In this document: one piece after another, positions 38,284-62,280 of the stretch
How positions within the stretch are numbered: position 1 is the stretch's first letter
Layout: each line of letters opens with the position of its first letter
Source: Oculina patagonica
Taxonomy: Eukaryota
Assembly: GCF_052425735.1 (NCBI RefSeq)
Contig: NC_135768.1
Location: forward strand, 3,224,001 to 3,288,000
Reading direction: 5' to 3'
DNA length: 64,000 nucleotides
Notes under the pieces: generated by a model
What the model saw: the letters and a program-made list of their open reading frames with translations, nothing else
Databases searched by the model: none
Told to the model about the DNA's origin: nothing
Position numbers and translations under genes: made by a program

Positions 38284-41200
38284 ATGATTACAACATGGCA
38301 TCAACTCGCTCCTTTTCTACGTCGAACTGCCGCCGTCTGCAATCCAAGAAATGTTTTTCCAGCCGCTAACTGCGTGTTGAGGAGCCGGCTGAACTCAAAT
38401 CAGAGGTAATTGACAATTATGAGCCATAAATTTCTCTATGTGCCGTGTACGATCTTTAATGAGCTCCGAGCAGAGATGCTCAAGTATCAAGTCGAGATAT
38501 TAGTTCCGGCTTGCGAATAATCCATACGATTTTCCTTTTTTTTTCAGAGTTTACACGAGTAGCTAGCGACTGCGTAACATTTGTTTACGAAATGAACCAT
38601 TTAAAATCAGTAGTCACACAACAGAATTTACGATTTTTGCGATCAGTATTAGGTAAATGTTGTAAGCGATCGAGGTTCAGTAGACCAGTTCCGAAATAGA
38701 TCAGGTGGGAACTCAACAATTTCTGAAAAAAATCCAATTGGTATTTGTAGAGGTGCGAGTTGCTGCACGGGTGTTTCCCGAGACTTACACATTTTTACAT
38801 GTATAATTTGAAGAAAAAAAACAGCCGCTTTTAAGCTTTTCTGTATATTTATTTCATAAATACAAGGCTTCATGATGGAATACAGAAACCAGAAATATTT
38901 CAGGGAAAAATTGGGCGTGTATTTTGGAAGAAAACAGCCAAAGTGGTTGCGTGACATTTCATCGATTGGCCAATCTTGGCTCTACCAGCGGAATAATCAT
39001 AAAACAAAAGAAATGACTCCTCCAAGCAACATATTGTGGTCTCTTTGTTTCTTCAACAAAGCCTTAAAGCTAAATTTGAATTTGTAATCGAGGGAGGGGA
39101 CTCTTTGGCCCCGAAATTTTTGTTTCGAGCTGGAACCTGGAACCTGGAATCTGAAATTTTGGAGCTGAAACGCCGAATTTCGTCACACTTTTCTGTTAGT
39201 CAGCAAAGCACGCGGACTAATTCTCGTCTTCCCGGGTGTAGGGACACGGACCATTATTTTTTCTAGCGGTGGGGGTGGGGGGACGATCTTTCTGGGCAAT
39301 AGATATTTCCTACATCTTCAGCCTTCAGGTGGTGCAACACTTTTTTTCGGCTTGCTTAATTTTTTCCTCCTGGCTCCCCTTGCACGATTTTCTTCAGCCG
39401 CCAGGAGCCATGGGCTCCGCGGCCGCTTTCTGTGCAGGATTTTTTTTTGAAAATTGCCCCCACCCCTTTAAAAAAGTAATGGTCCGTCCCTTCCGCGACC
39501 CTTATTACAAAATGAAAATGATATTTTAACATTTTCAATATTTTCTTCTGAAAGTGAAACTATAACCAATTTACTTTCTTTCTGTACAGTGCCTCGTTTA
39601 CGACTGAGAGGAAGGTAAGATTGCTTGCTTGGTTCAGACTAAACTAGAAGCGATTACATTTACGCGCGCATATGTCGTCTTTCTTTTCTCTGGCAATATA
39701 TTTTTTTTTGGAGGGCGAGGTTAGTCAATTTTCTGGGCAAGATATTCTTCAGGTTGTACAAGATTTTTATTTTTTCCCCTCGTGGCTCCTCTTGCACGAT
39801 TTTTTCAGCCGTTTTTTGTAAGGAAATTTTTTTTGGGAAATTGCATTTGATAGTTGCAAAGTTGACTGCTTACTGCCTCGCGTACCTCAAGAAAATTGAA
39901 GCTTTTGTGATATCTCGTAGCACATTCTCTAAACTATGTGCAACAGATTTGATTGCGTGACCAACCACACCCCACGTGACCAGAATTTTCAAAGAAATTG
40001 AGGGCCTCTTCATATGATCCCGGTTGACCGGGCTGGCCCAGTTACCGAGATCTCGGCTCACTCCTATTTTCTTTGTAAGATTTTTGATGTGTTCATATGA
40101 GAAGGCGGGCCAGCCCGTTTACCGATATCTCGGTTTCTGCAAACGAGATATCGGCAACCGGGAAGAAAATTTCCCCATATGAACACTCCAGCCCGGCCGC
40201 CGGGACGCAACTTTTTTTGAAAAAATAGCTTCCCTTTCGTAACTGGGCGGTCAAAATGGCATAATTTTGCCTTGTATCTATTTCCACTTTAGAAATATGC
40301 GAATTAGCTCTATAAGTAAAGTTACAAGGGTCGATAAAGCTACGATAGTCGCAAAAGATACAACTTTATGGGCCTCTTCACATGAGCCCGGTTTACGGGC
40401 TGTCTCAGTTACCAGGACAGATTTTGACCTCTGTTCATATGGAAAATTTTAGCCCGGTTGACGGGGATAAAATTCAAGAAACGAAGGCAAAATGGCGACA
40501 CATAAAGTTGCATCTTTCGCGACTATCGTAGCTTTATTGACCCTTGTAACTTTATTAATAAAGCTAATTCGCATATTTCTGAAGTGGAAATAGATACAAG
40601 GCAAAATTAAACCATTTGGACCACCCAGTTACGAAAGGGAAGCTATTTTCTCAAAAAAAGTTGCGTCCCGGCGACCGGGCTGGAGCGTTCATATGGGAAA
40701 ATATTCTTCCCGGTTGTCGAGATCTCGGTTGCAGAAACCGAGATATCGGTAACCGGGCTGGCCCACCTTTTCATATGAACACATCCAAAATTTTACAAGA
40801 AAATAGGAGTGAACCAAGATCTCGGTAACTGGGCCAGCCCGGTCAACCGGGATCATATGAAGAGGCCCTATGTGTCGCAATTTTGGTTTCGTTTCTTGAA
40901 TGTTATCCCCATCAACCGGGCTAAAATTTTCCATATGAACAGACGTCAAGCTCTGTCCTGGTAACCGAGACAGCCCGTTTACCGGGCTCATGTGAAGAGG
41001 CCCTTAGAAGTCTGAATAATACTTATTTTTCTCGAGGGATAATTAGTATTGATCACATGAATAAACTGAACAGTAGAATGGTTTAACTAATAGCGGGTGG
41101 AACTTCAAACTATCGTCACAGCTTTTTTTTTGACACCTCTATCTGCTTGATAAATGATCACAAATTGATCAGAGACTTTTAGACAAGTGGTGGCTCCTAA

Positions 41201-44200
41201 AAGAGCCGTTGTTTATTGGCGGGAAAACCGCCTCACTTCATGTTGCTGGTGTACTTGGACACAGCCTTGGTTCCTTCACTGATAGCGTGTTTGGCGAGTT
41301 CACCGGGGAGAAGCAGCCTGACGGCGGTCTGAATCTCACGGGAACCGATCGTCATTCTCTTCGCGTACTTTGCCAGGCGCGAGGCTTCGTTCGCAATACG
41401 CTCAAAGATGTCGTTGACGAACGAATTCATGATGCCCATGGCTTTGCTAGAAATACCAGAGTCGGGATGAACTTGCTTCAATACTTTGTAAATAAAGTAT
41501 CCATAACTTCTTTGCTTCCTCTTTACCTTTCTTTTCGTCTTAACGCCAACAGCACTAGTACTCGGCTTCGCCTTGCTAGCTTTCTTCTCGCCTTTTTTCC
41601 CGGCTACTTTTGGCGCCATAATTCGACCTTGTAGTTTACAGGAGCCTAACTTGTTTCCTCAATCAACCGAAAGAAAGAATTTATAAATTATAATTTTGTT
41701 ACACTTCTTTGTAATTTATAGCATAATCTGGAGCATATCAAATTTCACAAGGATCGAAATTTTCGCTTTCCGATTGGTTATATACTTTCGATCACGCATT
41801 CCTAAAGGTCACAGGTCAGCGCCTAAGTTTTGATTGGCGGATTTCGATCCCTTTCCACTGTAAAGAATTTCAGGTGTTTGCACGTTTGAACGACGAATCA
41901 AACGATGAAATAAGAGTTTGTACAATTCTCGACAAAAATTTATTCAAATAAGGGAAAATAATACTTGCAGACACCGAGAATGCTCATTTCCTACACTGAA
42001 CACGAGTGCAGTGGGGGAAAAAATGCCACTTTTTGGCAAAATCTTGTTGAAGTTGAAGCAGTCGAATTGTTTCAGAAGGCAGTCAGATATTCGCCTTTGC
42101 CATCACTGGTATTTCTTCCCCTACTGTTGCTGGTGTATCACGACAATGAAAACAAAAGAACCGGCATTATTTCGTTCAAAAAATTGAACAAGGAAATTGA
42201 AGACATTTTCCATACCCTGTTTGACAGCCGCTGTCTGGTCCGTCACGCAACGCCTCTCCGCTGTTGCGTGACAGCCCAAATCAGTTGCAGGGCGGCCCAG
42301 AGAAGGTTTCTGTGTTTTGACCCTCATTTTCCAGTTCTGGTAACTCTCTTGTGACGGAGCGAAGGTCAAACTGGACTGGCGCTTTTCGGGGTGCAAAATT
42401 CTTAGGGATGTACCATGATGTAGGGGGGGGGGGGGGCGGGGGCCGGGGGGGAGGAGAATTTTTTTTCTGCATTGGTAATTGCAAGTATTATATTACTATT
42501 ACAACTTTCTGCAAGATGTTTGTAATTTTTTGTACAATCCATGTTTCCAGGTGGGGCTTGCTTGAATTTTTTTTCCGTGCTTACTTGTCATAGTGCACCA
42601 GTTTTTTCTCCTAATTTTCTTCTACCAGAATTTGTTAGTAATTGCCGAATCCCCCAGCCCCCTAAAAAAATGCTTCGTTTCTTATTGAAACTAGAGAACG
42701 TTTTTTTTGTTTATTTCATTTCATCCAAGTCACACATTCCACTTGTCATTTTAAAACCGCTTTTCTTCGTATGTCATTTCCTTTTTTCATAGAACGGTTC
42801 TGTTCTAGACCGTTTGAATGCCGGTGACGTACTTGTTGGTGATGGAGGGATGACCTTCTGTTTGGAGAAGCGTGGATATGTAAAAGCAGGACCTTATAGC
42901 CCTGAGTGTACAGTGGAAAGTCCGGAGGCTGGTAAGAATTAGCTCAATTGGTATTTGCTCCATACGGCGGTTTCATTGCTAGCTCTGATTGGTTCACTGT
43001 GATGTTTAGGCGCGTTGCGATTGGTCAGCTAGATGCGACGAGGCTGGTGATGATGATGGTCTGGGACCGAGTAGCGATGCTCTCACAACTTGCAAAGCGA
43101 TCAATTCACAGATTTAATTCAACAGGCAATCTTTTCCCGCGAAATGGAAGCTGCTATGTCGTGGAATCACTTATTATAAAGGAGTTCAATTCTCTTAACT
43201 AAAAATCTAAAAGCAGCTGTTTAAATCCGAAAATTTCGTCATCGTCGTGTAGTTTTAAGAACGCAGAATTTTGTGATACCGTGCTACTTTTCAGTGCTGA
43301 AATGCAAATGTTTGTACCACGATTTTCAACTGGCCCACATGGGGATTGTTAATGAAGTAAAACGAAGAAAGACCAAGTCAACAAACAACTTCGAAACAAT
43401 AGAGCAAGAACAATAGCTCCGACTAGCGCGGGAATATTCATCGCCACGTTTTCATTACCATTCCCGTGATGGTTTTATTTCATAACAAACACCACATATT
43501 GACACCAAGAACCTTTCCGGAGAAATTTTCACTGCTTTAAAGACAAAACTTAGAAAGTCTTTTTTATTACTACATATATAAAAAAATCGAACTCTCTCAC
43601 TGGTCCCATGTTGTTATTGTTTTGGCAAGTTCACAAAGAAAGGAGCTGCTCATGCGCCTTAGAGACATCTGCTGACTACCGCCCCGATGATTGCTTTGCA
43701 AGTTGTGAGAGCATCGCTCAGATTTCATATAAGAGAATGTATGGGAAGTTGCTTCCCCCCCCCCCCCCCCCGTGCCCTCTTATTCATGCTCAGTTAAAAT
43801 AAGATATGGAATATTATTGCTCAGCGGTCTAATAAGCCAAGCTGGAACGGCTTGGCTTGGGGTCACAGTGTTGCATGACCCACGCGAATTTTTTGTCAGG
43901 GTGGGTGGGTGGGCCGATCCTTCCTTCACTGCTCCGCTGGCTAAAACTAAGTACGAAAGGAGTGTTGTTGTGCACCAACTTATTATTTATAGCGTTTCTA
44001 CGCCCTCGTGTAGACGGTACCTCGTGGGATGTGACATTTTCACGTGTTTTATTTTCGCAAATCATTACGAGTATTATGAATAGAATTTAGAAAACCGCTT
44101 GTTGTTTTGGCTCATTGCTTAGACTGTAATTTTTCATTTCAGTCCGCCAGGTTCATCGAGAATTTCTTCGAGCAGGAGCAGACATCATTCAAGCTTTTAC

Positions 44201-47200
44201 GTTTTCCATGGATGATAACGTTATTGACGAGCAGGTATTTGAAGATGAATTTTTTCAACAATGACACGAGCATGGGACAATAAGTCTATTTACAAAACCA
44301 TTCTTGAATCTATCTGAGTTTATTTCTTCTTTATTTCTTATTTTGAGTTTATTTCTGGGTATGACAGACTGTCACGTACCAACTCGCCCAGGGTGAACGA
44401 TAAGTAAAATACGAGGTTGACTGTAGTATAGCCTGCGTGGCCGGCGTTCATAGCGTCATTGCAGGCCTCCCTCTTCCTCCTTCTCCTTCTTCCTTTGAAC
44501 GCCGGCCACGCAGGCTAACTGTAGTTCTCTCTTTAAATCCGTTGTAGCTTCAAGGTTGAGAATTGTCGAATAAAAAAACGCTTGTTCCGCTAACAGCTCC
44601 TAATGGCTTCATTTTCTGTTCCTCTCGTTGACAGAACGAAGAAATTAACCAGGCCGCGTGCGACTTGGCTAAGGGCGTGGCTCAAGAGGGAGGGGTGTAC
44701 TCTGCAGGCTCTATCTGCCAAACAGCAAAACTTTACACGCAGGGAGTTGGAAAGGAACAAATACAGAAACGGTTCGAGCAACAGATCGAGATATTTCTCA
44801 GGAATGATTTGGATTTACTGATTGCTGAGGTAAGCTAAGGACAATTTTATAAAAAAAGAACCTTTATACGTTTGAATCACTTTTATATCATTTGTTTTCT
44901 CTCGTTTTCGCCCCTTTACCATATTTCCCTTTGAAGCATGTGGGTATAAAGGTCACATTTTGTCATTAAAGAGATTATTTACGTTCTTCTTCAACGGCAA
45001 ACGGCAAAATCTCAGCTTACCGTTGATTTTGTGAATGTTTCTTCAATAAATCCTTAGTGAAAAGCATTTAAAACATTTGAACGTCACAAACGCGAAACTT
45101 TTTCACCTTGGAACGGCAGCTGCAGGATTTAAGCCTTTTGCAGGAAAACGCACAAACGCAAAGCCTAATCACTCTGTTGCATTATGGAGGGATATTTAGT
45201 AAAAAACTTGTGCACTGTACTTGCAAATAAGGCTTGTGTTTTTTTCCATTAAAAAACTCTCTAGATAATTAAAAAACGCCAACTCTAGTGAAATTGTATC
45301 TTTCTCTGCAAAAGCGGGGTACAGATAATTTTTATGTTTTAAGTAGTCGAATAAATCGAACGGGGGTCCACCTCTGCTTATACAATGAGTAGTATTGCTG
45401 TATTTACTCACCCCCCCCCCCCTCCCCTTAGTTCTTTGAGTACGGAGAGGAAGCTGAATGGGTGGTGGAGGTGATGAAGAGCACAGGGAAACCAACTGCT
45501 ATTACGATGAGTATTGGTCCTGCTGGGGACAGTAACAACGTGCCGACAGGAGAATGTGCTTTGAAACTGGCGAGGGCAGGTAATTTTATCTTTCTATTGC
45601 TTTCCCGTCAACCCACCAGCGCGTATTGCTTTATCTGCTGTCTACCGCCTGACTGCTTTATAGATGTTGATTGCTCGATTTGAAACGAACCCATTAAAAC
45701 GCTGTGTAAAAGATGTCAAACAACAGGGCCGTACCTAGGATTGTTTGTCTGTGGGGGCAAACTCCGCTAATCAAACACTATGTTAGAAATTTAGTTTTCC
45801 TGGCAGGGGCAACTGCCCCCCCCCCCCCCCCCCCCCGCTAGGTACGGATCTGAATATTAATTAAAAGAGAACACTACCAAGTGGAGATTACAATTGTTAG
45901 AGCAGTTTTCAATTGAGTGACGTGAAACCAAAACCAAAGTTATCACTCTTAGCCAATCACAAAGAACACAGACAACCCAGTGAACTAATCAAAACTCGAA
46001 GCAAATACATGTAGCCGGCACGAAGCGCGGGAAAACGTGCGCGAGCGAGTCACGATTGGTTTTGGTTTTACTCCTGATTGGCTGAGAAAGTGGCGCGAGA
46101 TTTTTTAGCCAATCACTAAACGTAGTTATGCAAAACCAAAGCAAACGCAATTAACTTTCGACACTCAAGTGAAAACCGCTCTATGCACCAATCACTGCAA
46201 CTATTACCTCCTATTGTTTACGTAGCATTGCAATGCGCATCCTTAAGGTCATTGCCCCGAAATGGAACTGAACATAGATTTTTAACCAACTTTTGCCTCT
46301 AGTTGATTACCTTAAGAAGACATAAATTTTGAAATAAAAAAATAGGGTCACATTCGTGTAGAAGCAGGAAGACCTTGTACATACCATTTAATTCCTTAAA
46401 AATTCCCGTGTAAGTACTAGCACAGTACACGTCTCCAGTGATAGTTTCTTTTTCAAACAAAGAAATTGATCTGTTTTCATTTGACAGAAAGAATTTGATC
46501 GCTTCACTCAAATTATAAGAAAAAAAGATAGGTCACCCGCATAGAAAAAAGCAGCTACTTTGTTTATGTGCGCGCGTTAACAATCTCGCCCCCAGAGGCC
46601 CGCGATCCTTCTGGTCTGCGCCAGTTTCCCGGTAGGTACGTTATGTATATCAAGTAAGTAGAGTATATGGTAAATCAAGCTGGCACGGTTGGTTAAATAA
46701 TATATTGGGGACATAATAGTTCCCCATACATAACGTACCTACCAGTTTCCCGACCGCTGGTCAAGGGCAACGCAAAATTTCAAACCCCCAAAAATCCTTC
46801 GATCATCCCCGTCATTGACAAGTCGGAGTACCCCCCTGGGTTCGGGTTATGGGTTTTGGGTCATCCACGTCACTTGAAATTCCGAGTACCCCCTTAGGGT
46901 CACGGATCAAAACAGCTGCTTGTTCCACTAACTAAATATTCTTTTCTTTCCTCGTCAGGTGCTGACATCATTGGAGTGAACTGCAAGTTTGATCCTGCCA
47001 CTTCAATGGAAGCTCTTCGCTTAATGAAAGAAGCAATGGACAAAGAAGGACATCACCCTCATCTGATGCTACAGCCTGTCGGTTACCACACACCAGACGC
47101 TGGAAGGACTGGGTTCCAGAGTTTGCCTGAGTTACCTTTTGGTAATATTTCGCTTCATTCTGTGTTAGCTGTCTGTAACAGGTCGTAACGCGCGCTCTGA

Positions 47201-49950
47201 TTGGCCAGTTGGGTTGGTATTATAACTTGCGTTCTGATTGATCGTCTGAGTATTTCAATTATCTGTAGTCTCACTGGACATATCTGAGATTTGCCTCGAA
47301 ACATTCGGGCAGCATCAAAGAAACATTCGGGAAGCTTCCAAGAAAACTTTCATTTTGTTTGCTGCTTCTCAATTCCTTGTTCCAATTCACTCACACGATA
47401 CGCTTATTTTTATTCTTTTTCTTGTAGCTTTGGAGCCTCGTACACTTACTCGATGGGACGTTCATAAGTACGCTCGGCGGGCCTATGACATGGGAGTGAG
47501 GTATATCGGAGGCTGCTGTGGCTTTGAACCATACCACATCCGGGCTATTGCAGAGGAGGTATGAGAATACCTTATTATAGGAAATTAACGCTTGTGTTAA
47601 TTAAGGTATTTGAAATTAACGCGACTTAAATTAACGCGAATTGAAGAAAAATTACTTCCCAATAAAGGAAATTAACGCGAAAGAGGGGGTAAAATTTCAA
47701 AATGAAGGAAATTAACGCGACGTACACAACTGGTACAAGTTTATTTCAACACTTGCAGACGAAAAATCTTAAACGCAAACAATGTTCGTGGTACTTTTCC
47801 CACTTTGAGCGTTCTTCGCAGTATCAATGATAGTGGCAGATAAAACAATGCTTTTTCCTTGGAGTCAAGAACTTCTGGACTGCAACGAGAAATTGGGGCC
47901 AAAATAATGGAAATTAACGTCATGGAAATTAACGCTCCACTAAATTAACGGTGCGGAAATTAACGTTAACTAAAATTAACGCGACTTAAATTAACGCGAA
48001 TGTTTAAAATTCGCGTTAATTTCATGACGCAGGTCTACCAAGTCTGTACCAAAGACGTCTACAAAACATTGCCATTCTAATGTATAAAGTAAAACACGGA
48101 CTTGTGCCCACTTATATAACAGAAATATTTAATACAGCCCCGAAACGATATAATCTGAGGAACGCTGATTTTAATATTCCACGTTTTCGCACAGTACATT
48201 ATGGAAAACATTCTTTACGATATTTCGGGCCTTATCTATGGAGCAAACTAGACCACAGTGATAGAGAAAAACATAATGTCACGAGTTTTAAAAACAGTAT
48301 TGGGAGAAAAGACCTCACCCGTCTTATACAAACTGAGTGTAAATGTGACATATGCAGCTAGCCGATATACATTTTTAAATTTTTAATTTTTAACTCTTAA
48401 CTGCAATTTTTATCTTTCACCTACTTTTATGATAAAATTTTATATTCTATTGTAATTTATTTATTTATTAATCTATGTAGTACGATTCTTCAGTTTTTCT
48501 TCTTCTTAGAATTTAAGTGTAAATATTTTAACTTTAAATAGCTTAGATATATAATAATGTAAATAGTGTCCACAATTAGTTTTTTTAAGCTAAATACTTC
48601 AGACACTTTAATAAAGTATTTCATTCATTCACTACACTCAATTGAAAACTGCTCTATCAGGAAATAAATTGGTTTTACGGCTGATGTTAGGAGTGTCAGC
48701 ATTTCGTGAGTAGAGTATTGGAACCTGGCGAATCTTTCAATGTTAGCATTCTCCATTTGTTCAAAGAATTTCGTTGTTGAAAAAGGGCTCTACTAATTTT
48801 GTCTTGAAAGAGAAGCGGTTAAAATAATTATCTTTAATCTTGTCGTGTCTGCCAGTTAAGATTCTCTTAGTAAGTAGCTAGTGGGAAATTGAAGATATCG
48901 GTACGCTTTACAAAAGAAATACTCAGTATACTATAATGTATTATTATCTAATGTATTCTAATTTATCTAATCTATTTGTCATCAGCTTGTCCTGGGGCGT
49001 GGTTTTCTTCCTGCAGCAAGTCAAAAACATGAACTGTATAAATTATAATGTATTCAAATTTATTTGTCTTTAGCTTGCACCGGAGCGTGGTTTTCTTCCA
49101 GAAGCAAGTAAAAAACACGAACCCTGGGGAGAATCGTTAAAACATCACGCAAAGGACTGGATGAGACGCAGGTAAGGAGTCTTAAATGACAGAGAAGACA
49201 TTTTTTTATTTTGTCAACATTCAACTTGTTGAGTTTCTATAGAGAGAAAAGAGAGATTTTTCCAAGCAATTTTCCAATGTTATGTCACTGTGCGTTTGCT
49301 TTGCATTTTGCTCTTCGCACCTGCTCTAACCAATAGAAGACATGGTATTATAGCTTTGCGTTAAGCCACGTTTCGCGCTTGGTAACGGATACAAACATGC
49401 TACTGACTACCTGGTTTTGTTTAATATTTGGCCTGTAAGCCACGTACAGAAATATTTCCTGCCGCTGGGGGATCCACGAGTTTGTTGAGCCAATGATACA
49501 CGGTTCAAAATTTGTTGAGCAGCAAATGTTTCGACTGCTTTTCAACACATGTTGAACTGTGTATCATGTGATGTTGAATGTTAAAATATGCCATTCAACA
49601 TGTTAAACGTTGTTGAACGGAATGTTAAACCGTGTATCATTGGCTTTAAAGGGAGGATTTAAGTGCAAACGACAAAAATGTGACATCCGTATAAAGGCGG
49701 CGGCCATGCTGGTAATTGAATTCACTTTTTATCTCAAAGGCTGATTGATTGTGTTGACTAAAATTGCAACTCTCTTGTCCTCCAATATGGTTTATCGTCA
49801 AAACTTTATGTTAAAGTTCAATGACGGAAACTAATAAAGGGTTAATGTATTTTTGTACGCAGGGCAAATCGAGCTTACTGGGAGAACCTGGAGCCTGCTT
49901 CTGGTCGTCCTTATTCCTCCGCGTTTAGCAAGTTTGACGGACCTGCTTGA
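38284..49950 (+). CDS. BHMT: Betaine-homocysteine S-methyltransferase-like protein A, ~406 aa. Exons 38284-38405, 39590-39614, 42793-42931, 44143-44234, 44635-44829, 45432-45579, 46959-47141, 47428-47558, 49074-49171, 49863-49950
   Basis: [26 protein letters not shown], Zn ligands GVNC and [36 protein letters not shown]. Exons 3-10 are high confidence. Exons 1-2 are inferred from splice signals and exact phase fit (2 then 0). Confidence 0.88.
40002..41003. mobile_element. GGGCC-terminated (Harbinger-like) MITE with an inverted copy of the same family nested inside (40370-40868, TSD tat)
   Basis: Four gggcctcttca/tgaagaggccc termini; inner copy flanked by tat. Confidence 0.8.
41192..41207 (-). 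terminator. Histone mRNA 3' stem-loop
   Basis: Minus strand aac-GGCTCT-TTTA-GGAGCC-acca, 25 nt after the H2B stop codon. Confidence 0.85.
41233..41619 (-). CDS. H2B: Histone H2B (divergent variant), 128 aa, intronless
   Basis: [57 protein letters not shown] (~41715) and CCAAT boxes (~41775, ~41835) upstream on the minus strand. Confidence 0.95.
45900..46181. mobile_element. 281-bp CCAAT-rich MITE, copy 2 (opposite orientation)
   Basis: Reverse complement of 23740-24020. Confidence 0.85.
47568..48025. mobile_element. MITE with aaattaacgcg internal repeats; right end disrupted by a LINE
   Basis: taccttattataggaaattaacgc ... gcgttaatttc. Confidence 0.6.
48030..48631 (+). mobile_element. 5'-truncated CR1/L2-group LINE (ORF2 C-terminus + 3' UTR)
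   Basis: [43 protein letters not shown]; ends aataaa + (cattc/attc) short tandem tail. Confidence 0.75.
48986..49048 (+). pseudogene. Partial tandem duplicate of BHMT-A exon 9 with its own acceptor
   Basis: cag|[20 protein letters not shown] versus the true exon [18 protein letters not shown]. Upstream intron sequence is also duplicated. Confidence 0.75.
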
Positions 49951-50517
49951 TGACGTCACACAGCATAGAAATGTTACAATAAGCATTCATTGACCAAGAG
50001 TCATTAAAATTACTTATCAGGATATATGTTATATAGTATCCATAAGGACTTCATATGTTGCAATATATAGCTTTTTAAATATAGCTTTTTTATATATTTT
50101 CGTTCAAAAAGAGCTATGGTTTCCACTGACTCTTTTTTAATTTCTTGTCCTAACGCATTGAATTGAACTAGTCGTTAACTTCAGCAATCTTTTATTCATC
50201 AGTCATAAAAGTACATTTGCGTGAACTCATTCTTCGTGTATGCGTCTTGGTGATATTTTTAACCGGAAAATAACGACTACACAAAGTATTTCATAGCAGG
50301 AGGCGCAGTGGCCTAATGGTTAGTGCGTTCGACACCGGATTGAGTATTATACTTCTTGGCGTCACACACAAAAACTGGCCATGTTGCCCCAAAAAACGAC
50401 CTTAGTAAGCATACTCATAATTGAATAAAGAAAGATGGAGACATCTTTCTTATACCTATAATTATTCCGGAAATCATTTAAACGCACTGGAATTAATTTT
50501 ATTCTCCAGTGCAGTTT

Positions 50518-52807: not shown

Positions 52808-55800
52808 TCATTGTTGTTGGCCCAGTCCTCCCGGTCCACTGAATGAAGGGCAAAATGGACGACCGCTGGCTGGTTTTAGATTCTCCCAGTAGGCTCGATT
52901 AGCTCTAAAAAAGGAAATCAAACAAGTGTTACAGTTAACAAGGCAAGCAATAAACGGTTTAAAGTATTTGTTATTTGCAGAAAAGCGAATGAATGACTTC
53001 TTATTGTGAACAAACCTCTGAAATTGAAGCAGTTTTGACTAAGTATCGGCTGCTACCCTCGGTGGAACAGTGTTCACTATTCATGCATAAAACTATTTGA
53101 AATCTGCTATTTTTCCAAGCAATGATTAAACAGCAACTTTATTCTAAGTTTGAAAATGTGACCAAATATGCTTTCCCCTCAATGTCGAGGAAGGAAGTTG
53201 CGACCATCTGAGTAAGCGCCTGGAACTGTTCCGTGAGATTTTTTTTTTGACGAACTTGAGAGATACTGCAAGATGATTTTTTCTTTGACCATAGTGAGTC
53301 AACTCACTGTGCTTTGACCATCAGAATGAGGGCTAACGGACCTCCCCCCAGTCTCACCTTGCTCGGACTTCAGCTACCGAGTGGTGTTTGAGTGCCTCAC
53401 CCCAGGGACTATGCTTGTCGCTCGCGGGTGGAAATCTGCCTCGCTCTGGGGCAAGCTGAAAATAAAAAAACATTTCTCGTTCTCAAAAACAAAAGCAGAT
53501 GCATGAAAGCTAGACGAGTTATTGCTGCCACTAACATGTCATGTAAGCATTGGAATTTGGTTGAAGACATTCTCGAGCCGGTTGTGTTTGTACTAAAACA
53601 ATTAGACTAATTGCCCTCTTTTTCTATGAGCGATAGTGAACTCTGATGCGCCTCATTGATTATATAATATTCGCTCATAAAAAAAACTCGGGCTCGTAGT
53701 CCAATACCGTAGAATTCCGGTTATAAGCCCTGGGCTTATACAACTTCGTAAGGGGTTTTGGATGGGCTTATAAGCGGAGGGGCTTATATCCGGGAGGGCT
53801 TATATTAAAGTGGAATAAAAAAACCGTTTCGAAACGAGCCATGGGAGTGTTGATCGAAATACGTTTTTAGGTTAAGACCACATAATAAAGCAACATTTAG
53901 CCCTGTTCAGTATCGTCATTCAGTAGAGGGGGGCTTTTATCCGGGGGGGGGGTTTATAACCGGATGTATTTTTTTGTTTTAAGGTAGATGGGCCTATAAC
54001 CGGGGGGGCTTATAAGCGGAGGGGCTTATAACCGGAATTTTACGGTATTTAATTAGCAGTTCTACCTCCTCTGCGACAGCCCGGATGTGGTATGGTTCAA
54101 AACCACAGCAGCCGCCGATATATCTGACTCCCATTTCATAGGCCCGCCGAGCGTACTTATGAACATCCCAGCGAGTTAGTGTACGAGGCTCCAGGGCTAA
54201 ACAAGCGAATAATAAATACAATATCAATAGAATGCCTGCTTCTGTCGAGGGCCTTCCCGAAGATCTTTGAAGGCGCTCCAAACACTTCAGGAAGTGCTTC
54301 GCCAAAGTACTTTCACGAGTACTTCTAATTTCTCTTCTAAAATCGGGGAATTCGGGTAAAATAAAGTCATTTATATATAGCTTTTCTTTTCTCACATTGT
54401 TTCGAGATTACATACATTTCTTAAATTTGTCAGTTAGGCGTGAGAGACTTGAGCAGACGTGAGATCCACACAGCGGTCAAACGCAGCGTGCGTGCGCAGT
54501 TCATGTGTAATTGCCGCCAAAATTTTCCATACAAAGTCATAAATTTTCCGTAAACTTTTGCTTTAAAGCCAAAAGTTAACGCCGTCCCTGGAAAGTTAAG
54601 GTCTATACGCCGCTTATGGATTGGAAATTTGATAATTCATCTCCACTGAGTGTCCCAGCTTGAACTGTTCTTTCACCGTACATTCTTTAACAATTTCTTG
54701 CAAAAGTTTGCCTACTTTCGAGTCAAAAGTTCGAGGCGGCAAAGACCGGATGTGACGTCAATTTTTGCGTTTGACCGCTGTGAACGTGAGATCGAAGTTT
54801 CGACCCGCAGGCGCCAAGAGAGGTACAGCGGAACCTCGATTTAACGAAGTGCCAAGGGACTGATGAAATTTGTTCTTTATTTCGAGGGTTCGTTATATTG
54901 AAAACCTCGATATAACGAATTTGCGGAAAAACAACCAAAATGTTCGTTATATCGAGGTATAGTGAAGAAATTATTCAACATGACACGAGCGTGGGACAAA
55001 GAAAAAATCTGAGTCCCCGACGGGAATCGAACCCATGGCCTCCCAGATACCGGTTGGGCGCTCTAACCAAATGAGCTACGAGAGACTCGTTGTGAGCTGG
55101 GCCATTTACTAGGTTGATATGTGACACGCGTCCTGCATACTGCTAGGATCAGCAATGTCGAAATCATCAAATGTGTAGTAAATAATAAAGATGGAAAATT
55201 TCAAGCTCGGTGATAAATAGTGAAGAAATTATTCAACATCACAACGAGTCTCTCGTAGCTCAGTTGGTTAGAGCGCCCAACCGGTATCTGGGAGGCCATG
55301 GGTTCGATTCCCGTCGGGGACTCAGATTTTTTCTTTGTCCCACGCTCGTGTCATGTTGAATAATTTCTTCTCTATTTATCACCGAGCTAGAAATTTTCCA
55401 TCTTTATTATTTACTATCGAGGTATAGTTAATCAATTTTTAAGAATTTTCATCCTTGTTGGTCTGTTCGGCATTCATCATCTTAAAATCGAGAAACATTT
55501 TACGTTTGGGCTTCTGGATTGTGTTCGTTATATCGAGCCCTGTTCTATACATTTTGCGGTAACTTTGGCCGGGCTGAAGAATATCGTTCGTTAAACCGAG
55601 GACTTCGTTAAAAAGAGGTTCCACTGTAGCAGGTATGGTAAGGAATTTTATCGTCTGATATTGCACGTCCAAGATTATACGCGGTTCGCGCTTCGAACAC
55701 GAACTCGAACTCCCCTTCTCCTTTCCCTTTAAACGCCAGCCACGCAGGCTAACCACAATTAGTTTTGGCCAATGAAAAAAACAGTGAATAACTACAACGG

Positions 55801-58800
55801 TTGACATTTAGCATGCAAGGGCTGGGACTTCACAGCTATCGACTTAGGGCTTCCAGTCTAGTTGTTACAGACAAATACGTCGTATGCTAAGAAGCAGTTA
55901 CTAACATAGCTGAGTACCCCCCTGGGACACCCCCCCCCCCCAGCTTAACCCGTGGGATGCGGCTGTGGGGGGAAAGGGAACTCACCGAGCGGGTTTTCTG
56001 GTAAATATTGAAATCCATAAATCCCGGTATCTGGAGTATGGTAACAAACTGGTTGTACCATCAGATGAGGTTTGAGTCCTTCTTTGTCTAACGCCTCTTT
56101 CATTAAACCAATGGTCTGTAAACTCTGATCCGGATCAAAGTTACAGTTGACACCAATGATATCAGCTCCTTTATGATAAAACAAACAAACGTCAACACAT
56201 GAGCTTGGCCTTGCCTCTTGGAACAATCAATGCCTTCTTACAACGTAACGTAAGGTAACCTGCGTTGCAAACGAACTAAACCCAGGATTTTTCTACACGT
56301 CCGGCTGCAACGCAGTCAAAACGTAAGGCAATGTGGCCTCATTTTGCGTCATGTGACGTAACGAAACGTGTTTTCGTTTCTAGTTCCGATTGGATCGTTA
56401 TTGCATTAGAGCGGTTTTCACTTGAGTGTCGAAAGTAAATTGCGTTTGCTTTGGTTTTGCATTACTACGCTTAGTGATTGGCTTAAAAATCTCGCGCCAA
56501 TTTCTTAGCCAATCAGAACTAAAACCAAAACCAATCGTGACTCGCTCGCGCACGTTTTCCCGCGCTTCGTGCCAGCTACATGTATTTGCTTCGAGTTTTG
56601 ATTGGTTCACTGGATTGTCTGTGTCCTCTGTGATTGGCCGGAGTAATTACTTTGGTTTTGGTTTTACGACACTCAATTGAAAACTGCTCTATATGTGTTA
56701 AAATGTATCTATACTAGGGATAGTGTACACTAAATCTGCCCCCGCTGTTAATCCGTTTGTTTTTTCAGCTCAGCCGTTACGTAAGTCAATTCTTTCGCTT
56801 GATATTTTGGCTCTTCTGTTTGTTAAATTGATTGAAAATCAATTGGCCTAACTGCATGCGCAGAATACCCTGCCACTCCGTCCACACCTCAGTCACCAAA
56901 ATATCACATGGTTTTTGGCTTTCTCTTCTTGCGATTCATGTGATTTAAATCAAACCTTCAGGATGAACTGTTGAAGCCAAGTGAATACGCAAAACAAAGG
57001 AAATTAGGCAAAAATTCAGAAAGATAAATGATCACGTAAATTTAATTACAAGAACGCCACTGTAACCGCGTTACAACAATTTGCCGTGTTTTGCTGTATT
57101 GAGGGATCTCAGTGAAGATAAACTTTAGCAACACCAAATTGTTTTTAAAACTAGTATTTAAGCCCAACTGTTTTACAGCGCGACGCGTCATACCGTGGCC
57201 ACCCAACAAACCTTTTTTTATGTATACAAGTGTTTTATCATGATATCCGCGACTATATGTTTGACGAACACGCCGCCTTGCAAAGTTGAATACGATCAAA
57301 TGGATACTTGTTACATCGTATTTATTAACAAAACGCAGTGAAAACGTAAAATATTACCAGATGACACTTGTAAAAAACTTTGTTGGGTGGCCACGGTAAG
57401 GCGCGTCGTACTGTAAAATGTACACCTAATTGCAAAAAGGTTGTCATAGAAAAAGGAAAAAAGAAAAAGTCAAATAGGAATAAATTAAGCGCATGCATGA
57501 AATTTATTCGGACAAATGGCCTCAAAATGCCTCAAAATACGAATAAATCAATTTATCTTGTTACAGCAAAACATTTTGGACTAAAAGTGTGCGATAAAAA
57601 CTCGCAATTTTTCTGTAATTGCAATAAGTCATGAAACTACGCTAATTAATTCCTATTTACCTTTTTTCTTTTTTCTATTTTTCTATGACAACGTTATTGC
57701 AATTAGGTGTATCTATATTATAGCTATCAGGGTCACAAGCAGATCGCCCGGCCAAGAGTGTACTACGTTTCGCTCCGTTTTCATAATAACGGTTGGGAGA
57801 AATTGGCCTATTCACGCTCACAAATGCTGATAGGGTTAAACAAAACAGTATATAAACACTTGAAAAATCTCGTTCCCAAGGCTTTTCCCTTAGTAATCTG
57901 GCCTGGGAACGAAACTGACACTATTTTATTGATTTTCATGGACTCGGCATCGTTCTAAAAGCACTCACAATTTTTTTAGAATATAAGTATAAAATCCAAA
58001 ATCCGCCATGCAGAAACGCTGCTACGTCACATGTAACCCAGCCCTCTCATTAGAATAAGGTGCGTCTGTCTCCCGAATTGTTTCATGATCTGCTTCCACT
58101 TTAAGTAAGCTACAACGAAATGCCTCACAGTACCTGCCCTTGCTAGTCTCACGGCACATTCTCCAGGTGGCACACCTTTCTTATCACCCTGTGGCCCAAT
58201 ACACATTGTAACAGCTGTTGGTTTGCCTGTGGACTTCAACACTTCCGCTACCCATTCAGCTTCCTCTACGTGTGCAAAGAACTGAGGGGAGAGGAGAGAG
58301 TGAGTGCCTGAGAAATTTAATTTTTATGGGGGTAGGGGTAAGTATAGCAAAGTGTCCGTGGTGTCTTCAGCAGACAAGGTAATCGTAATCGAACAAAAAT
58401 AATTGCTTTGAAAGAACAGAGAAAATTCACAGGACTCTCAACTGTTAGAGTTAGCAAGGACACAGGAATGACGTATACAAAAAAACTTTCTTCCGCTCTC
58501 ATTGTTTGTCACTTTCTTGGCAATCAGATCAGTGTGAACAATTACTTAGTTTTTTGAAGCATTAATTCCTCCGTAATAAAATATGAACCAAAAAGCAGAT
58601 TCCAAAACTGAAATAGGACTCAACTCACCTCAGCAATAATCAAATCAACATTATTCTGGAGGAAAATCTCAATTTGTTCTCTAAACTTTTTCGTCACAGC
58701 GTCTTTTCCAGCACCTTGTAAATACAGGGAAGCAGTCTGACAGATGGATCCAGCAAAATACACCCCTCCCTCCTGAGCCACGCCCTTTGCAAGGTCACAT

Positions 58801-58823
58801 GCCGCCTGGTTTATTTTTACGGT
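52808..58823 (-). CDS. BHMT: BHMT-like protein B, 3' six exons: 58823-58629, 58281-58134, 56168-55986, 54196-54066, 53455-53358, 52904-52808. 5' exons not found in the window
   Basis: Exon sizes 195/148/183/131/98 identical to copy [47 protein letters not shown]. No stops or frameshifts. Confidence 0.88.
53707..54045. mobile_element. Tc1-like MITE (ccgta..tacgg ends, ggggcttata repeats)
   Basis: ta|ccgtagaattccggttataagccc ... gggcttataaccggaattttacgg|ta. Confidence 0.75.
54826..55626. mobile_element. Tc1-like MITE hosting a nested tRNA-cored element
   Basis: ta|cagcggaacctc ... gaggttccactg|ta. Confidence 0.75.
54964..55414. mobile_element. Inverted-dimer retroelement with two tRNA-like modules (55013-55090 minus, 55246-55323 plus)
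   Basis: 14-bp duplication tatcgaggtatagt on the flanks; two near-perfect inverted copies. A degraded relative lies at ~7365-7495. Confidence 0.75.
56409..56689. mobile_element. 281-bp CCAAT-rich MITE, copy 4
   Basis: Near-identical to 23740-24020. Confidence 0.85.
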
Positions 58824-60761
58824 CTGAAAGAGAGTTCTGTCGGCATTGATCTCAAATAAAAGTCACTAAATAACCATTAACACTTGAAAAATATAAAACG
58901 TAACAAACGAAAAAGCCAAAACCATGTGTTATAACATCATAAAATTAATGGAAAAAGCATTTACAGGGAAATAGCAAGCGGCTTGATTTCGAAAAAGCAC
59001 CCCTTTTGTGTACATGTACCCTTTATTGGAAAAAGATACCCCTTTCATATAACTATACCACATGACATTTTACTTAAAACAGGAAATCTTTCTTGCCATT
59101 TTTATGTAGCGCTTAATAAATTAAGACAACAGAGCCATAAGGTGTGTCTTTTTAAATATCTTAATGACAGATTTCCCGTCCCTTTCATATACCTAAACTT
59201 GTAAGAGCGAAGGCACAGATTTTTGAAGCAAACCTTGTCCACGGTCAAAAATAAAACCCTCCTTTATTTTTAATTTTTAAACAGGTTTAAGTGAGTTTTT
59301 AAAGGTTTCGGGGTTTATTTTTCAAAATACCGCCGACTTTCGGAAATATTTGAGAAAATCGATTTCGCACTATTGAAGGCTAAAAATAGCCGAATTAAAT
59401 AGCAAAATTAAGCATTCGCAAAAACGTTCTCGCGTTGTTGATAGAAGTTATATCATCGAGAATTAGAAACATATACTTAAAGTTGAAGAATAAATCAATG
59501 TTTTTATGCCTGTGTTTCGGTTTTAGATTATACTTTTCACAGCGAAAGTAACGCTCTTTGATGACAATTTTATAACTGCTTTAGTAAATACAGTTTCACC
59601 TCATAATAACAAGATTACTTTTCGATATGTGGCCATTCTTTAATCGGCTTCATTTTATGGCTATAAAATGCCCAAAGACTCTTCTTTATCTACATATAAA
59701 AATTGGTTCGGGTTTTTAAGCGAGCGCGTTTTAAAACGCCATCAAAATATGGGTAATTTAACTAAAATTTGAACTAATTTGCATATCACCGTTTTGATGA
59801 CATGTTACATGTAACAGCCGCATTCGCGTAAAAGCTGCAAACTCTGGTTTTCCTTAAATTTGTGCTTAACACTAAATTAAACTTGAAATCCTTTTCTATC
59901 CCTACTGAAAGGATCACTTACCTTTTATATTGCTGCGGTAGATACAGCAAAAGCGGCGAAAGGAGCGTTTGACTTATAAACAGTAGAGACTCACAGATGC
60001 CACATTTCATTCTCTACAAAAATTTACGATCTATAATTACATTTTCTTGAATCTGAACAAGATCATATTTTACGCAGCCATGAATTTCTTTTAATATCTT
60101 CGCGTACTTACCCGAAATTAGCTGCAAGGGACTAAAAGGCCAGTGTTACGATTTGTTTGAGTATTACGTGACGATTCAGATAAAGTTGTAACGCATGACC
60201 GGCAAATGGAATTTCAAGAATGTTTTGTTGTTGACGGGTAGTTTATTATTTTTATTTCTTTTTTTGGGAGTGAAAATATCTTTAAATAGTTAGAGCTATT
60301 TATATTTTTAAATTGCTATTATTTATATTTCTTATAAGTTTTCATTTTATTTTATAACTTTTTTTAAATTAGATTTTAGGTAAACCAGGCAGGGCCCCTA
60401 CGCTAGCCGCTGAACGTGCCACCCTCGATCAAGCTACAAGCCGTATTCAGTGCAGACGCGTGTGCGGATAGCTCACTATATTGATAATAAATTAGTAAAA
60501 TAAACTAAATCTCCCCGATAAACATTGAAAATTTCACATAAAAGCCAAAAAATCCGTTGCCCACGAACACTTCTGTCGCACAAAATTTGCGCACTACAAC
60601 ACCTGTGTAAACATCCAAATTAAATTATGAAATCTAATTATAAACTTACAGAAAATATCACGAAATTTTAATTTCGGAATTGAAGTATGTTTGGTTAAGT
60701 GTCAAATTTTAAGCATACAGAATTTATAGAAAACACCTTTGCATCCATACAACAAAAACCT

Positions 60762-60940
60762 TTGTAAGAAGATAAAAAAAGCGTTCTCTGGTAAAATATT
60801 TAAAAATTATAAGCTTTCGACAGCCAGACTGCTGTCTTCGACGGATAAAAAGGAAGTAGAAGACAAAGACAGCAGTCTGGCTGTCGAAAGCTTATAATTT
60901 TTAAATATTTAACCAGAGAACGCTTTTTATCTTCTTACAA
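60762..60940. repeat. ~75-bp-arm inverted repeat containing partial hammerhead-like elements
   Basis: Arms 60762-60838 and 60866-60940, each with acagc-agtctg-gctgt-cGAAAgctt. Confidence 0.75.
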
Positions 60941-61263
60941 TGAATCCTGGTATCGGATCTTCAATATTTTTATAAAAACCTTTTTGCTGGCATTTGAGAA
61001 TGAATACAAAAAAAGTTGAAGAATGGGGCGGTGAGCAGTGGGTGGTGAGTGGATTATACTGGATCCGTGCTCGGCCTGTAAGCAAACTCTGAAAGTAGAC
61101 AATGTTTGAAAATACTTTTGAATCACTGTTTGAATTTTAAAAAATACCCTCCTTCTTTCTCATGGGCAGAGATTTTCCTTTTCAGTTCGTGCTACTGGTC
61201 AGTTGCAAGTAAGACTCACGACATGTCAGTATAATGCGTGACGCTTATGCCAAGGTAAAAGGA

Positions 61264-61265
<2 letters not shown>

Positions 61266-61299
<34 letters not shown>
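61266..61299. repeat. (GT)n microsatellite followed by poly-G
   Basis: Direct observation. Confidence 0.95.

Positions 61300-61301
<2 letters not shown>

Positions 61302-62246: not shown

Positions 62247-62280
<34 letters not shown>

What the first reader, a model, noticed from the sequence alone, without database searches (positions are those of the whole stretch)
42793..49950. BHMT-like enzymes with the betaine pocket rewritten: candidate SMM/DMSP-type methyltransferases
Seen: Zn ligands (GVNC, GGCC) and the GDGG / AE homocysteine-binding motifs are intact. Positions equivalent to human BHMT W44, Y77 and Y160 (betaine-binding) read GPYSPE, FTFS and AEFF in copy A; copy B also has AEFF. The F267 equivalent is L (A) or N (B). 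The loop after FTF is 9 aa shorter ([22 protein letters not shown]), and both proteins stop shortly after ASGRP, lacking the C-terminal helix. Known (human sequences recalled, not aligned computationally): mammalian BHMT2, an S-methylmethionine-using enzyme, has Ser at this position, the same 9-aa deletion, ICQT and the C-terminal truncation. BHMT also accepts thetins, and corals are rich in DMSP and diverse betaines. Inference: convergent or ancient BHMT2-like enzymes that use a sulfonium or other non-glycine-betaine donor. With the presequence, this would be a possible undescribed mitochondrial route linking DMSP/SMM to methionine.
Basis: partly seen in the sequence, partly recalled or inferred. 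Interest (0 to 1): 0.8.

Follow-up and report, generated by a model that had tools for sequence, protein, structure and literature searches.

The report
Coral BHMT genes converged on BHMT2
Two neighbouring stony-coral genes encode zinc homocysteine methyltransferases of the BHMT family whose methyl-donor pocket, loop and tail changed independently in the same way as in mammalian BHMT2, so they may not use glycine betaine as coral studies assume.

Summary
Copy A (+ strand, ten exons, 38284-49951) splices to a 406-aa protein identical to an annotated Oculina patagonica protein. Copy B (- strand, 52808-58840) is its convergent neighbour. Zn ligands and homocysteine-binding residues are intact. 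Y77 is Ser, Y160 is Phe, F267 is Leu or Asn, the loop is 9 residues shorter, and the C-terminal helix is missing. An alignment with tool-fetched mammalian BHMT2 confirms the recalled resemblance.

RNA contigs from four runs splice 44234|44635 directly, so no microexon restores the loop.

Corrections:
- The likeness to BHMT2 is convergent. The coral proteins form their own clade, and an AU test rejects a joint clade (p 6e-7).
- W44 to Tyr is peculiar to this species' copy A; most coral relatives keep Trp.
- ICQT also occurs in canonical invertebrate BHMTs.
- Copy B's first ~94 residues are not encoded in the window.

Of 174 sites near-invariant in canonical BHMTs, 13 changed in both corals and BHMT2, against 3.5 expected (P 5e-7).

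A searched sea-anemone canonical BHMT recovered no named stony-coral orthologue.

The donor is untested. A sulfonium donor (SMM, DMSHB or DMSP) is a reasonable inference. Continued betaine use remains a serious rival.

The parts
38284..38405 (+). Copy A exon 1: start codon and most of the basic N-terminal extension (residues 1-40)
   Evidence: tblastn of P0161 residues 1-40 is 100% identical here. The frame was read, and the spliced product equals P0161. The donor position was adjusted by hand to GT.
39590..39614 (+). Copy A exon 2: 25-nt microexon encoding SASFTTERK
   Evidence: Exact peptide match. An RNA contig carries 221 nt upstream of 42791, which equals 25 + 122 + 74 nt of 5' UTR.
42793..42931 (+). 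Copy A exon 3: GDGG (D26 G27 G28 equivalents) and GPYSPE (W44 replaced by Tyr)
   Evidence: Sequence. The junction 42931|44143 is seen in RNA contigs of three runs.
44143..44234 (+). Copy A exon 4: FTFS (Y77 replaced by Ser) and the first half of the shortened loop
   Evidence: Sequence. The junction 44234|44635 is seen in four RNA runs with no letters between.
44635..44829 (+). Copy A exon 5: [14 protein letters not shown], ...LLIAE (E159 equivalent)
45432..45579 (+). Copy A exon 6: begins FF (Y160 replaced by Phe)
46959..47141 (+). Copy A exon 7: GVNCK (Zn ligand C217 equivalent; H218 replaced by Lys) and [10 protein letters not shown] (F267 replaced by Leu)
47428..47558 (+). Copy A exon 8: GGCCG (Zn ligands C299 and C300 equivalents)
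   Evidence: The junction 47141|47428 is in four RNA runs.
49074..49171 (+). Copy A exon 9: start of the dimerization-arm region
49863..49951 (+). Copy A exon 10: [17 protein letters not shown] and stop; no C-terminal helix
58629..58840 (-). Copy B: first homologous exon (from ...[13 protein letters not shown] to ...IIAE)
58132..58281 (-). Copy B exon beginning FF (AEFF)
55985..56171 (-). Copy B exon with GVNCN and ...LPENPL (N at F267)
54063..54202 (-). Copy B exon with GGCCG
53356..53455 (-). Copy B penultimate coding exon
52808..52907 (-). Copy B last coding exon: [20 protein letters not shown] and stop
59921..60010 (-). First exon of copy B as annotated in the public record; not homologous to any BHMT N-terminus
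   Evidence: P0168 residues 1-30 map here, and the alignment shows no similarity to relatives.

Best explanation
Shown:
- Both genes belong to a stony-coral branch of the BHMT family (Pfam PF02574).
- The branch split long ago into type A (copy A: basic N-terminal extension, loop 9 residues shorter) and type B (copy B: no extension in full-length relatives, loop 5 residues shorter).
- Copy A is transcribed and correctly spliced. Related transcripts differ from it mostly by synonymous changes. It keeps the three zinc cysteines and the homocysteine-binding residues, and its model has the BHMT barrel.
- The residues and loop that hold the methyl donor in BHMT changed at the same otherwise invariant positions as in mammalian BHMT2, and the tail is cut at the same place. 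This happened independently.

Inferred:
- These are active zinc enzymes that methylate homocysteine to methionine.
- They have largely given up glycine betaine as donor.
- They take a longer or more reactive donor, most probably a sulfonium compound available in corals: S-methylmethionine, the DMSP precursor DMSHB, or DMSP itself.
- Lacking the C-terminal helix, they are unlikely to form the BHMT tetramer.
- Type A is probably imported into mitochondria.
For: Identity and expression:
- The spliced window sequence equals P0161.
- PF02574 covers residues 63-346 at 155 bits.
- The best solved relatives are human and rat BHMT (E 5e-142).
- The AF2 model has mean pLDDT 82.5, with TM 0.86-0.93 and rmsd 1.7-2.3 A to BHMT chains.
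- RNA contigs in four runs carry the exact junctions.
- 17 synonymous against 4 nonsynonymous differences in related transcripts.
- Copy B's exons are held by RNA runs at 0.27-0.37 of sampled words, where exons make up 0.51 of the stretch.

Catalytic core: D26, G27, G28, F76, E159, C217, C299 and C300 are kept in every coral sequence that covers them.

Donor pocket: Y77 is S in 16 of 17, Y160 is F in 17 of 18, P126 is A or S, H218 is K (type A) or mostly R (type B), F29 is M, and F267 is non-aromatic. All of these are invariant or nearly so in 16 canonical BHMTs.

Convergence: 13 shared changed sites against 3.5 expected (P 4.6e-7). Without the loop-adjacent sites it is 9 against 2.5 (P 8.8e-5).

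Independent origin.

Literature:
- BHMT2 uses SMM, cannot use betaine and is monomeric. Deleting residues 86-94 from human BHMT leaves Zn and Hcy binding but no activity with betaine (PMC4516251, the latter cited there as unpublished).
- W44, F76, Y77, Y160, F261 and F267 line the substrate site, and mutations of D26, Y77 and E159 deplete activity (PMC9713302).
- A bacterial PF02574 enzyme makes methionine from DMSP or betaine in vitro (PMC12366255).
- Corals make DMSP by way of DMSHB (PMC9135737).

Ancient A/B split: both types occur in Acropora, Montipora or Porites and in Oculina or Desmophyllum.
Against: - No enzyme assay exists, so the donor is pure inference.
- In Acropora millepora the two BHMT homologues rise together with DMGDH and SARDH under low salinity, which the authors read as betaine breakdown (PMC5557254).
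- If stony corals have no canonical BHMT, as one search suggests, these would be the host's only candidates for that step.
- Most coral sequences keep W44.
- Type B lost only 5 loop residues, and fish BHMTs with a 7-residue loop are taken to be normal (PMC4516251).
- Y160 to Phe is not shared with BHMT2. It removes the residue reported to coordinate zinc in the resting enzyme (PMC9713302), so activity could be lowered.
- Shared changed sites could reflect shared relaxation of the betaine site rather than a shared new donor.
- Positions 259-267 are variable within type B.
- Corals are not known to make SMM.
- Copy B's N-terminal third was not seen.
Confidence: 0.5

Rival explanations
1. They are still betaine-homocysteine methyltransferases. 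This is simply the fast-evolving stony-coral version of BHMT, holding glycine betaine with a differently built pocket and feeding dimethylglycine to DMGDH.
For: - They are the closest and apparently the only BHMT relatives in named stony corals.
- They are co-induced with DMGDH, SARDH and betaine-aldehyde dehydrogenase in hypo-osmotic stress (PMC5557254).
- Corals hold much glycine betaine (PMC7240134).
- W44, F76 and F261 are kept in most sequences.
- An AU test does not reject a common clade with sea-anemone canonical BHMT (p 0.13).
Against: - Y77 and Y160, invariant in 16 canonical enzymes, are both lost.
- The loop whose deletion abolishes betaine use in the human enzyme is shortened (PMC4516251).
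- The changed sites coincide with those of BHMT2, which cannot use betaine.
Confidence: 0.3
2. They use another nitrogen betaine found in corals (for example proline betaine, alanine betaine or taurine betaine) rather than a sulfonium compound.
For: The pocket is remodelled and probably enlarged (Y77 to Ser, shorter loop).
Against: - No BHMT-family enzyme with such a donor came up in the papers read.
- The loss of both tyrosine hydroxyls fits a more reactive sulfonium donor better. This is inference.
- The convergence is with an SMM enzyme.
Confidence: 0.1
3. They are catalytically dead or decaying copies kept for a non-enzymatic role or not at all.
For: - Y160, reported as a zinc ligand of the resting enzyme, is Phe.
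- Positions 259-267 vary within type B.
- Copy B lacks its N-terminal exons in the window, and its public model starts with an unrelated exon.
Against: - All zinc cysteines and Hcy-binding residues are invariant across 18 coral sequences.
- Both types appear to have been retained since before the split of the two main stony-coral groups, as judged from named taxa.
- 17 synonymous against 4 nonsynonymous differences.
- Copy A is correctly spliced and expressed.
- The new residues S77, F160, M29 and K218 are themselves conserved.
Confidence: 0.05
4. They are ancient orthologues of BHMT2, a lineage older than the cnidarian-bilaterian split.
For: Shared Ser77, the 9-residue gap and the C-terminal truncation.
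Against: - BHMT2 nests within mammalian BHMT with full support.
- A joint clade is rejected (lnL difference 60.4, p-AU 6e-7).
- PMC4516251 dates the BHMT/BHMT2 duplication to the root of mammals.
- Marsupial BHMT2 and the platypus sequence still have Phe at position 77, and the platypus sequence keeps the C-terminal helix.
Confidence: 0.01

Closest known systems
Mammalian BHMT2 (S-methylmethionine-homocysteine S-methyltransferase)
   Same: - Zinc and homocysteine sites are kept.
- Ser at position 77 (eutherians).
- 9 residues missing from the loop after FTF.
- Pro126 lost.
- His218 replaced by a basic residue.
- Phe267 lost.
- The protein ends within two residues of the same point, without linker and C-terminal helix.
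   Different: - Independent origin.
- Only 55-58% identical.
- Corals also change Y160 to F, F29 to M, A78 to M and D263, which BHMT2 keeps.
- BHMT2 changes G28 to S and P43 to L, which corals keep.
- Type A has an N-terminal extension.
- The donor of the coral enzymes is unknown.
Canonical BHMT (human 1LT8/4M3P/8D45, rat 1UMY; sea-anemone orthologues)
   Same: - Best sequence and fold match: 56-58% identity, TM 0.86-0.93.
- Same barrel, same zinc cysteines and same Hcy-binding residues.
- The dimerization-arm region is present.
   Different: - Y77, Y160, H218, P126 and F267 are replaced.
- The loop is 9 (A) or 5 (B) residues shorter.
- No C-terminal tetramerization helix.
- HTKPWVRARA is altered ([10 protein letters not shown] in copy A; E replaces W342 in 11 of 12 type B).
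- Type A has a presequence-like extension.
Bacterial Bmt of Phaeobacter inhibens and E. coli MmuM / plant HMT (PF02574)
   Same: Same Pfam family and zinc chemistry. They are precedents for sulfonium donors (DMSP for Bmt, SMM for MmuM) in this fold (PMC12366255).
   Different: Only about 20% identical to copy A in the fold alignment (MmuM 5DMM/5DMN). They lack the BHMT dimerization arm, and their donor sites are built differently.

Membership tests
Pfam PF02574 homocysteine S-methyltransferase | Significant match to the family profile over the whole domain | tested here: met
   P0161 scores 154.9 bits (cut-off 22) over profile positions 1-283 of 283. P0168 scores 108.3 bits over profile positions 68-282 only.
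Pfam PF02574 homocysteine S-methyltransferase | Three cysteine zinc ligands (C217, C299, C300 in BHMT numbering) | tested here: met
   Present in copies A and B and in all 18 coral sequences.
Pfam PF02574 homocysteine S-methyltransferase | Homocysteine-binding residues D26, G27, G28 and E159 | tested here: met
   Copy A has all four. For copy B only E159 could be seen, because the exon with D26-G28 is not in the window.
Canonical BHMT (betaine-homocysteine S-methyltransferase, EC 2.1.1.5) | Donor-site residues W44, Y77, Y160 and F267 | tested here: not met
   Copy A reads Y, S, F, L. Copy B reads F at 160 and N at 267. All four are invariant in 16 canonical sequences.
Canonical BHMT (betaine-homocysteine S-methyltransferase, EC 2.1.1.5) | Full-length loop L2 including residues 86-94 | tested here: not met
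   9 residues are missing in type A and 5 in type B. RNA contigs exclude a missed microexon.
Canonical BHMT (betaine-homocysteine S-methyltransferase, EC 2.1.1.5) | C-terminal linker and helix (residues 371-406) for the tetramer | tested here: not met
   Both copies stop at the equivalent of about residue 374-378.
Canonical BHMT (betaine-homocysteine S-methyltransferase, EC 2.1.1.5) | Methyl transfer from glycine betaine | not testable with these tools
   Needs an enzyme assay.
BHMT2 (SMM-homocysteine S-methyltransferase) | Descent from the mammalian BHMT/BHMT2 duplication | tested here: not met
   BHMT2 nests in mammalian BHMT (100/100). The coral clade is separate (97/95). The AU test rejects a joint clade (p 6e-7).
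BHMT2 (SMM-homocysteine S-methyltransferase) | Loss of Tyr77, deletion of 86-94 and loss of the C-terminal helix | tested here: met
   Same states in type A. Type B has a shorter deletion.
BHMT2 (SMM-homocysteine S-methyltransferase) | Use of S-methylmethionine and not betaine | not testable with these tools
   Needs an enzyme assay.

The most novel reading that the evidence does not exclude
Stony corals replaced canonical BHMT with two old paralogues that draw methyl groups from sulfonium osmolytes. Type A would work inside mitochondria as a DMSP-, DMSHB- or SMM-homocysteine methyltransferase. That would be an animal-encoded route that demethylates the DMSP pool and regenerates methionine. 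The host step 'betaine to dimethylglycine' drawn in coral metabolic maps would then not be carried out by these genes.
Probability: 0.2. Interest if true: 0.8.

Novelty: new variant of a known kind. Interest (0 to 1): 0.6.

Why it matters
Coral studies place these genes on metabolic maps as betaine-homocysteine methyltransferase and read their induction as glycine betaine breakdown (PMC5557254, PMC7240134). The sequence gives reason to doubt that assignment. The betaine-holding residues and loop are gone, in the pattern of the one family member known not to use betaine. No named stony coral showed a canonical BHMT in the search made here.

If the donor is a sulfonium compound, the coral host would have its own link between the large DMSP pool and the methionine cycle. 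With type A, that link may sit in mitochondria.

Whatever the donor, this is a clean case of parallel evolution. Two lineages separated since before bilaterians changed the same invariant sites, the same loop and the same tail. That gives structural biologists a second, independent data set on what sets donor choice in this fold.

In the papers searched here I found no description of this. NCBI's automatic name for one Oculina paralogue, 'BHMT2-like', is the only hint.

Tried and rejected
1. Microexon in intron 44235-44634. Rejected: contigs of four RNA runs join the two exons with contiguous record coordinates. Reading through the donor hits a stop.
2. Copy B's N-terminal exons. tblastn at E up to 50 with six relatives over 58800-64000 found nothing. 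The best hit (60553-60606, E about 1) does not continue as the GDGG exon and is chance.
3. Fetching DNA beyond the window via P0168 failed, because the protein is not on record in that index.
4. Primary papers were not held: Szegedi 2008, Gonzalez 2003 and Pajares 2006. Statements on BHMT2 and on mutagenesis are therefore cited second-hand from PMC4516251, PMC9713302 and PMC3871600. My recollection that Y77F abolishes activity (Castro et al. 2004) is from memory only.
5. The protein Atlas search gave only generic PF02574 clusters.
6. The representative search with one 44-aa exon returned mostly fragments. Only a few full-length proteins were usable.
7. Placing the coral clade relative to sea anemones failed. 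Deep nodes are weak and the coral stem is long. A cnidarian clade is neither recovered nor rejected.
8. Rfam found no RNA family in the strongly covered intron stretch 45800-46200, which is a repeat with inverted ends.
Full report
**What is there**

The window is eukaryotic, about 40% G+C, with no N. The finding's coordinates (42793-49950) cover eight of the ten exons of one gene on the + strand.

tblastn with exon peptides found a second, convergently oriented copy on the - strand at about 52.8-58.8 kb.

A search of 1.84 billion representatives with the GGCC exon, followed by a search with a full-length hit, returned two Oculina patagonica proteins.
- P0161 (406 aa) is exactly the product of copy A spliced from the window.
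- P0168 (317 aa) is exactly copy B as annotated.

Copy A has two further 5' exons, 38284-38405 and a 25-nt microexon at 39590-39614. A histone H2B gene sits antisense in the long intron before 42793.

**Check of the observation**

For numbering I used a 407-aa mink BHMT1 that carries W44, Y77, E159/Y160, C217 and C299/C300 at the human positions.

Copy A has:
- D26, G27, G28, F76, E159, F261 and the three zinc cysteines;
- Y at position 44, S at 77, F at 160, K at 218 and L at 267.

HMMER against human BHMT chains aligns residues 51-404 to 11-372 (E 5e-142). The loop after FTF has nine gap positions, and nothing matches the C-terminal helix.

Copy B shows AEFF, GVNCN, N at 267 and GGCCG, and stops 15 residues after ASGRP.

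- Eutherian BHMT2 has FTFS, the same nine-residue gap and GICQTS.
- It ends at SKPDA, two residues before the end of copy A.

**Microexon**

Contigs of four RNA runs, from three organism labels and four studies, carry these junctions:
- 44234|44635, 45579|46959 and 47141|47428 in all four runs;
- 42931|44143 and 44829|45432 in three of them.

In the longest records the coordinates run on without extra letters across the 44235-44634 intron. Transcript-derived orthologues from other species have the same short loop.

The four-residue difference in loop length between type A and type B lies at the start of the exon after this intron. It is an exon-boundary difference, not a skipped exon.

**What the family looks like**

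Named relatives at 70-83% identity all come from stony corals: Porites, Montipora, Acropora, Oculina and Desmophyllum. They fall into two well-supported groups.
- Type A (100/100): the nine-residue gap, the ending SKFDGPA and, in four species, a 45-50-residue N-terminal extension.
- Type B (98/92): a five-residue gap and a short N-terminus in its full-length members.

Both types occur in Acropora, Montipora or Porites on one side and in Oculina or Desmophyllum on the other. From my own knowledge of coral taxonomy, these genera belong to the two main stony-coral groups, so I infer that the split is old. Oculina has at least a third gene, P0159, which NCBI's pipeline named 'BHMT2-like'.

A search with the canonical BHMT of the sea anemone Actinia found anemone orthologues at 82-84% identity. 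It found no named stony-coral protein among the best 120 hits, all of which were at or above about 67% identity. This suggests, but does not prove, that stony corals lack a canonical BHMT.

**Convergent, not ancient**

In the maximum-likelihood tree, BHMT2 nests inside mammalian BHMT (100/100). The coral clade stands apart on a long stem (97/95).
- Holding corals and BHMT2 together costs 60.4 log-likelihood units (p-AU 6e-7).
- Holding corals with sea-anemone BHMT is not rejected (p 0.13).

This agrees with the published dating of the BHMT/BHMT2 duplication to the root of mammals (PMC4516251).

**How strong is the convergence**

Among 174 positions that are invariant or nearly so in 16 canonical BHMTs:
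- 29 are changed in at least 80% of coral sequences;
- 21 are changed in at least 80% of BHMT2 sequences;
- 13 are changed in both, against 3.5 expected (hypergeometric P 4.6e-7).

Leaving out four sites next to the deletion, the overlap is 9 against 2.5 (P 8.8e-5).

The shared sites are V30, Y77, K82, L83, N85, R86, P126, L129, G195, H218, Q259, I262 and F267. Of these, Y77 and F267 are named substrate-site residues, H218 is next to the zinc ligand C217, and 82-86 lie in loop L2. A cryo-EM paper that summarises the crystal structures lists D26, G27, G28, W44, F76, Y77, E159, Y160, F261 and F267 as the substrate site (PMC9713302).

Several new residues are themselves conserved in corals: S77 in 16 of 17, F160 in 17 of 18, M29, A126, and K218 in all type A. 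That argues for a new constraint rather than decay. By contrast, positions 259-267 vary within type B.

- W44 is kept in most coral sequences and in BHMT2. The Tyr is a peculiarity of Oculina copy A and three type-B sequences.
- BHMT2 keeps Y160.
- ICQT or VCQT also occurs in canonical invertebrate enzymes.

**Is it a working gene**

- PF02574 matches the full domain of copy A.
- The AlphaFold model is confident in the barrel (mean pLDDT 82.5; 239 residues at 90 or above). It superposes on human and rat BHMT with TM 0.86-0.93. The N-terminal 46 residues are modelled as disordered.
- Among the best-supported differences between the window and related transcripts, 17 are synonymous and 4 are not.
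- Copy B's exons are held by many RNA runs at about the share expected for exons alone.
- Copy B's first ~94 residues (GDGG, W44, FTFS) are not encoded anywhere in the 5.1 kb up to the window's end. The public model starts with an unrelated exon. The missing exons may lie beyond the window or may be lost.

**Mechanism**

Shown: a zinc-cysteine site and a homocysteine site of the BHMT type, a remodelled donor site, and no tetramerization helix.

Established knowledge, taken from papers:
- BHMT2 uses S-methylmethionine, cannot use betaine and is monomeric.
- Removing residues 86-94 from human BHMT leaves zinc and homocysteine binding but no activity with betaine (PMC4516251, citing Szegedi 2008 and unpublished work).
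- Tyr77 contributes to the betaine site, and its mutation depletes activity (PMC3871600, PMC9713302).

Inference: the coral enzymes still methylate homocysteine but have largely given up glycine betaine for a longer or more reactive donor.

Candidate donors present in corals are DMSP and its precursor DMSHB. Corals use the transamination pathway (PMC9135737). SMM from bacteria or food is a further candidate. A bacterial enzyme of the same Pfam family makes methionine from DMSP in vitro (PMC12366255).

Type A's extension carries 7-10 basic residues and one acidic residue, is rich in Ser and Thr, and is conserved in four species. This fits a mitochondrial presequence, but no predictor was available.

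**Rivals**

The serious rival is that these remain betaine enzymes.
- They are the only BHMT relatives seen in stony corals.
- The two Acropora homologues rise together with DMGDH and SARDH under low salinity (PMC5557254).

I give this rival 0.3. Other nitrogen betaines as donors get 0.1, dead enzymes 0.05, and ancient BHMT2 orthology about 0.01. The main reading, including the donor shift, gets 0.5. The part that is shown (a functional coral-specific BHMT branch convergent with BHMT2) I hold at about 0.9.

**Novelty**

The genes are annotated, and one carries an automatic 'BHMT2-like' name. The papers I could search treat coral BHMT as a betaine enzyme, and none mentions the rewritten pocket. 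This is a new variant of a known kind. It is of real interest for coral sulfur and one-carbon metabolism and as a case of parallel evolution, but the key functional claim is untested.

No N runs were met.

The scan's earlier notes on this window (s1-291735, 5' exons; s1-291844, nested H2B) agree with what I saw.

Noticed in passing
window 41233-41619 (-): An intact 128-aa histone H2B open reading frame lies antisense inside the long intron of copy A, between the 25-nt microexon and exon 3.
   Followed up: no
window 48966-49034 and 49054-49122: An 88-bp tandem duplication (83% identity) copies the acceptor site and the first ~49 nt of copy A exon 9. If spliced in, the upstream copy would read [17 protein letters not shown] and soon hit a stop. 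Its use was not tested.
   Followed up: partly
window 45897-46184: A repeat with inverted ends (MITE-like) sits in copy A intron 6. RNA contig depth there is 10^4 to 10^5, a thousand-fold above the exons, with many loose ends at both borders. There is no Rfam match.
   Followed up: partly
window 55016-55082 (-) and 55252-55318 (+): Two tRNA-like matches (Rfam RF00005, 39 and 41 bits) lie in inverted orientation inside an intron of copy B. They may be tRNA-derived repeats.
   Followed up: no
window 47580-48010: The intron after copy A exon 8 holds many copies of a short 'GGAAATTAACGCG'-like unit in both orientations, with high RNA contig depth.
   Followed up: no
window 58841-64000 (-): Copy B has no detectable exons for its first ~94 residues in the 5.1 kb up to the window's end. 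The public gene model (P0168) starts instead with an unrelated exon at 59921-60010.
   Followed up: partly
protein P0245 (platypus, named BHMT): It groups with BHMT2 and has the 9-residue loop deletion and Phe77, but keeps the full C-terminal helix. This looks like an intermediate state in BHMT2 evolution.
   Followed up: no
protein P0130 (406 aa, source unknown): A canonical-type BHMT (W44, Y77, Y160, full loop) with a short basic N-terminal extension (MRMLQKTVAKRLFTSAAPKK). This may be another case of organelle targeting in the family.
   Followed up: no
protein P0159 (Oculina patagonica, elsewhere in the genome): A third Oculina paralogue of type B, 76% identical to copy B. NCBI's pipeline named it 'S-methylmethionine--homocysteine S-methyltransferase BHMT2-like'.
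   Followed up: partly
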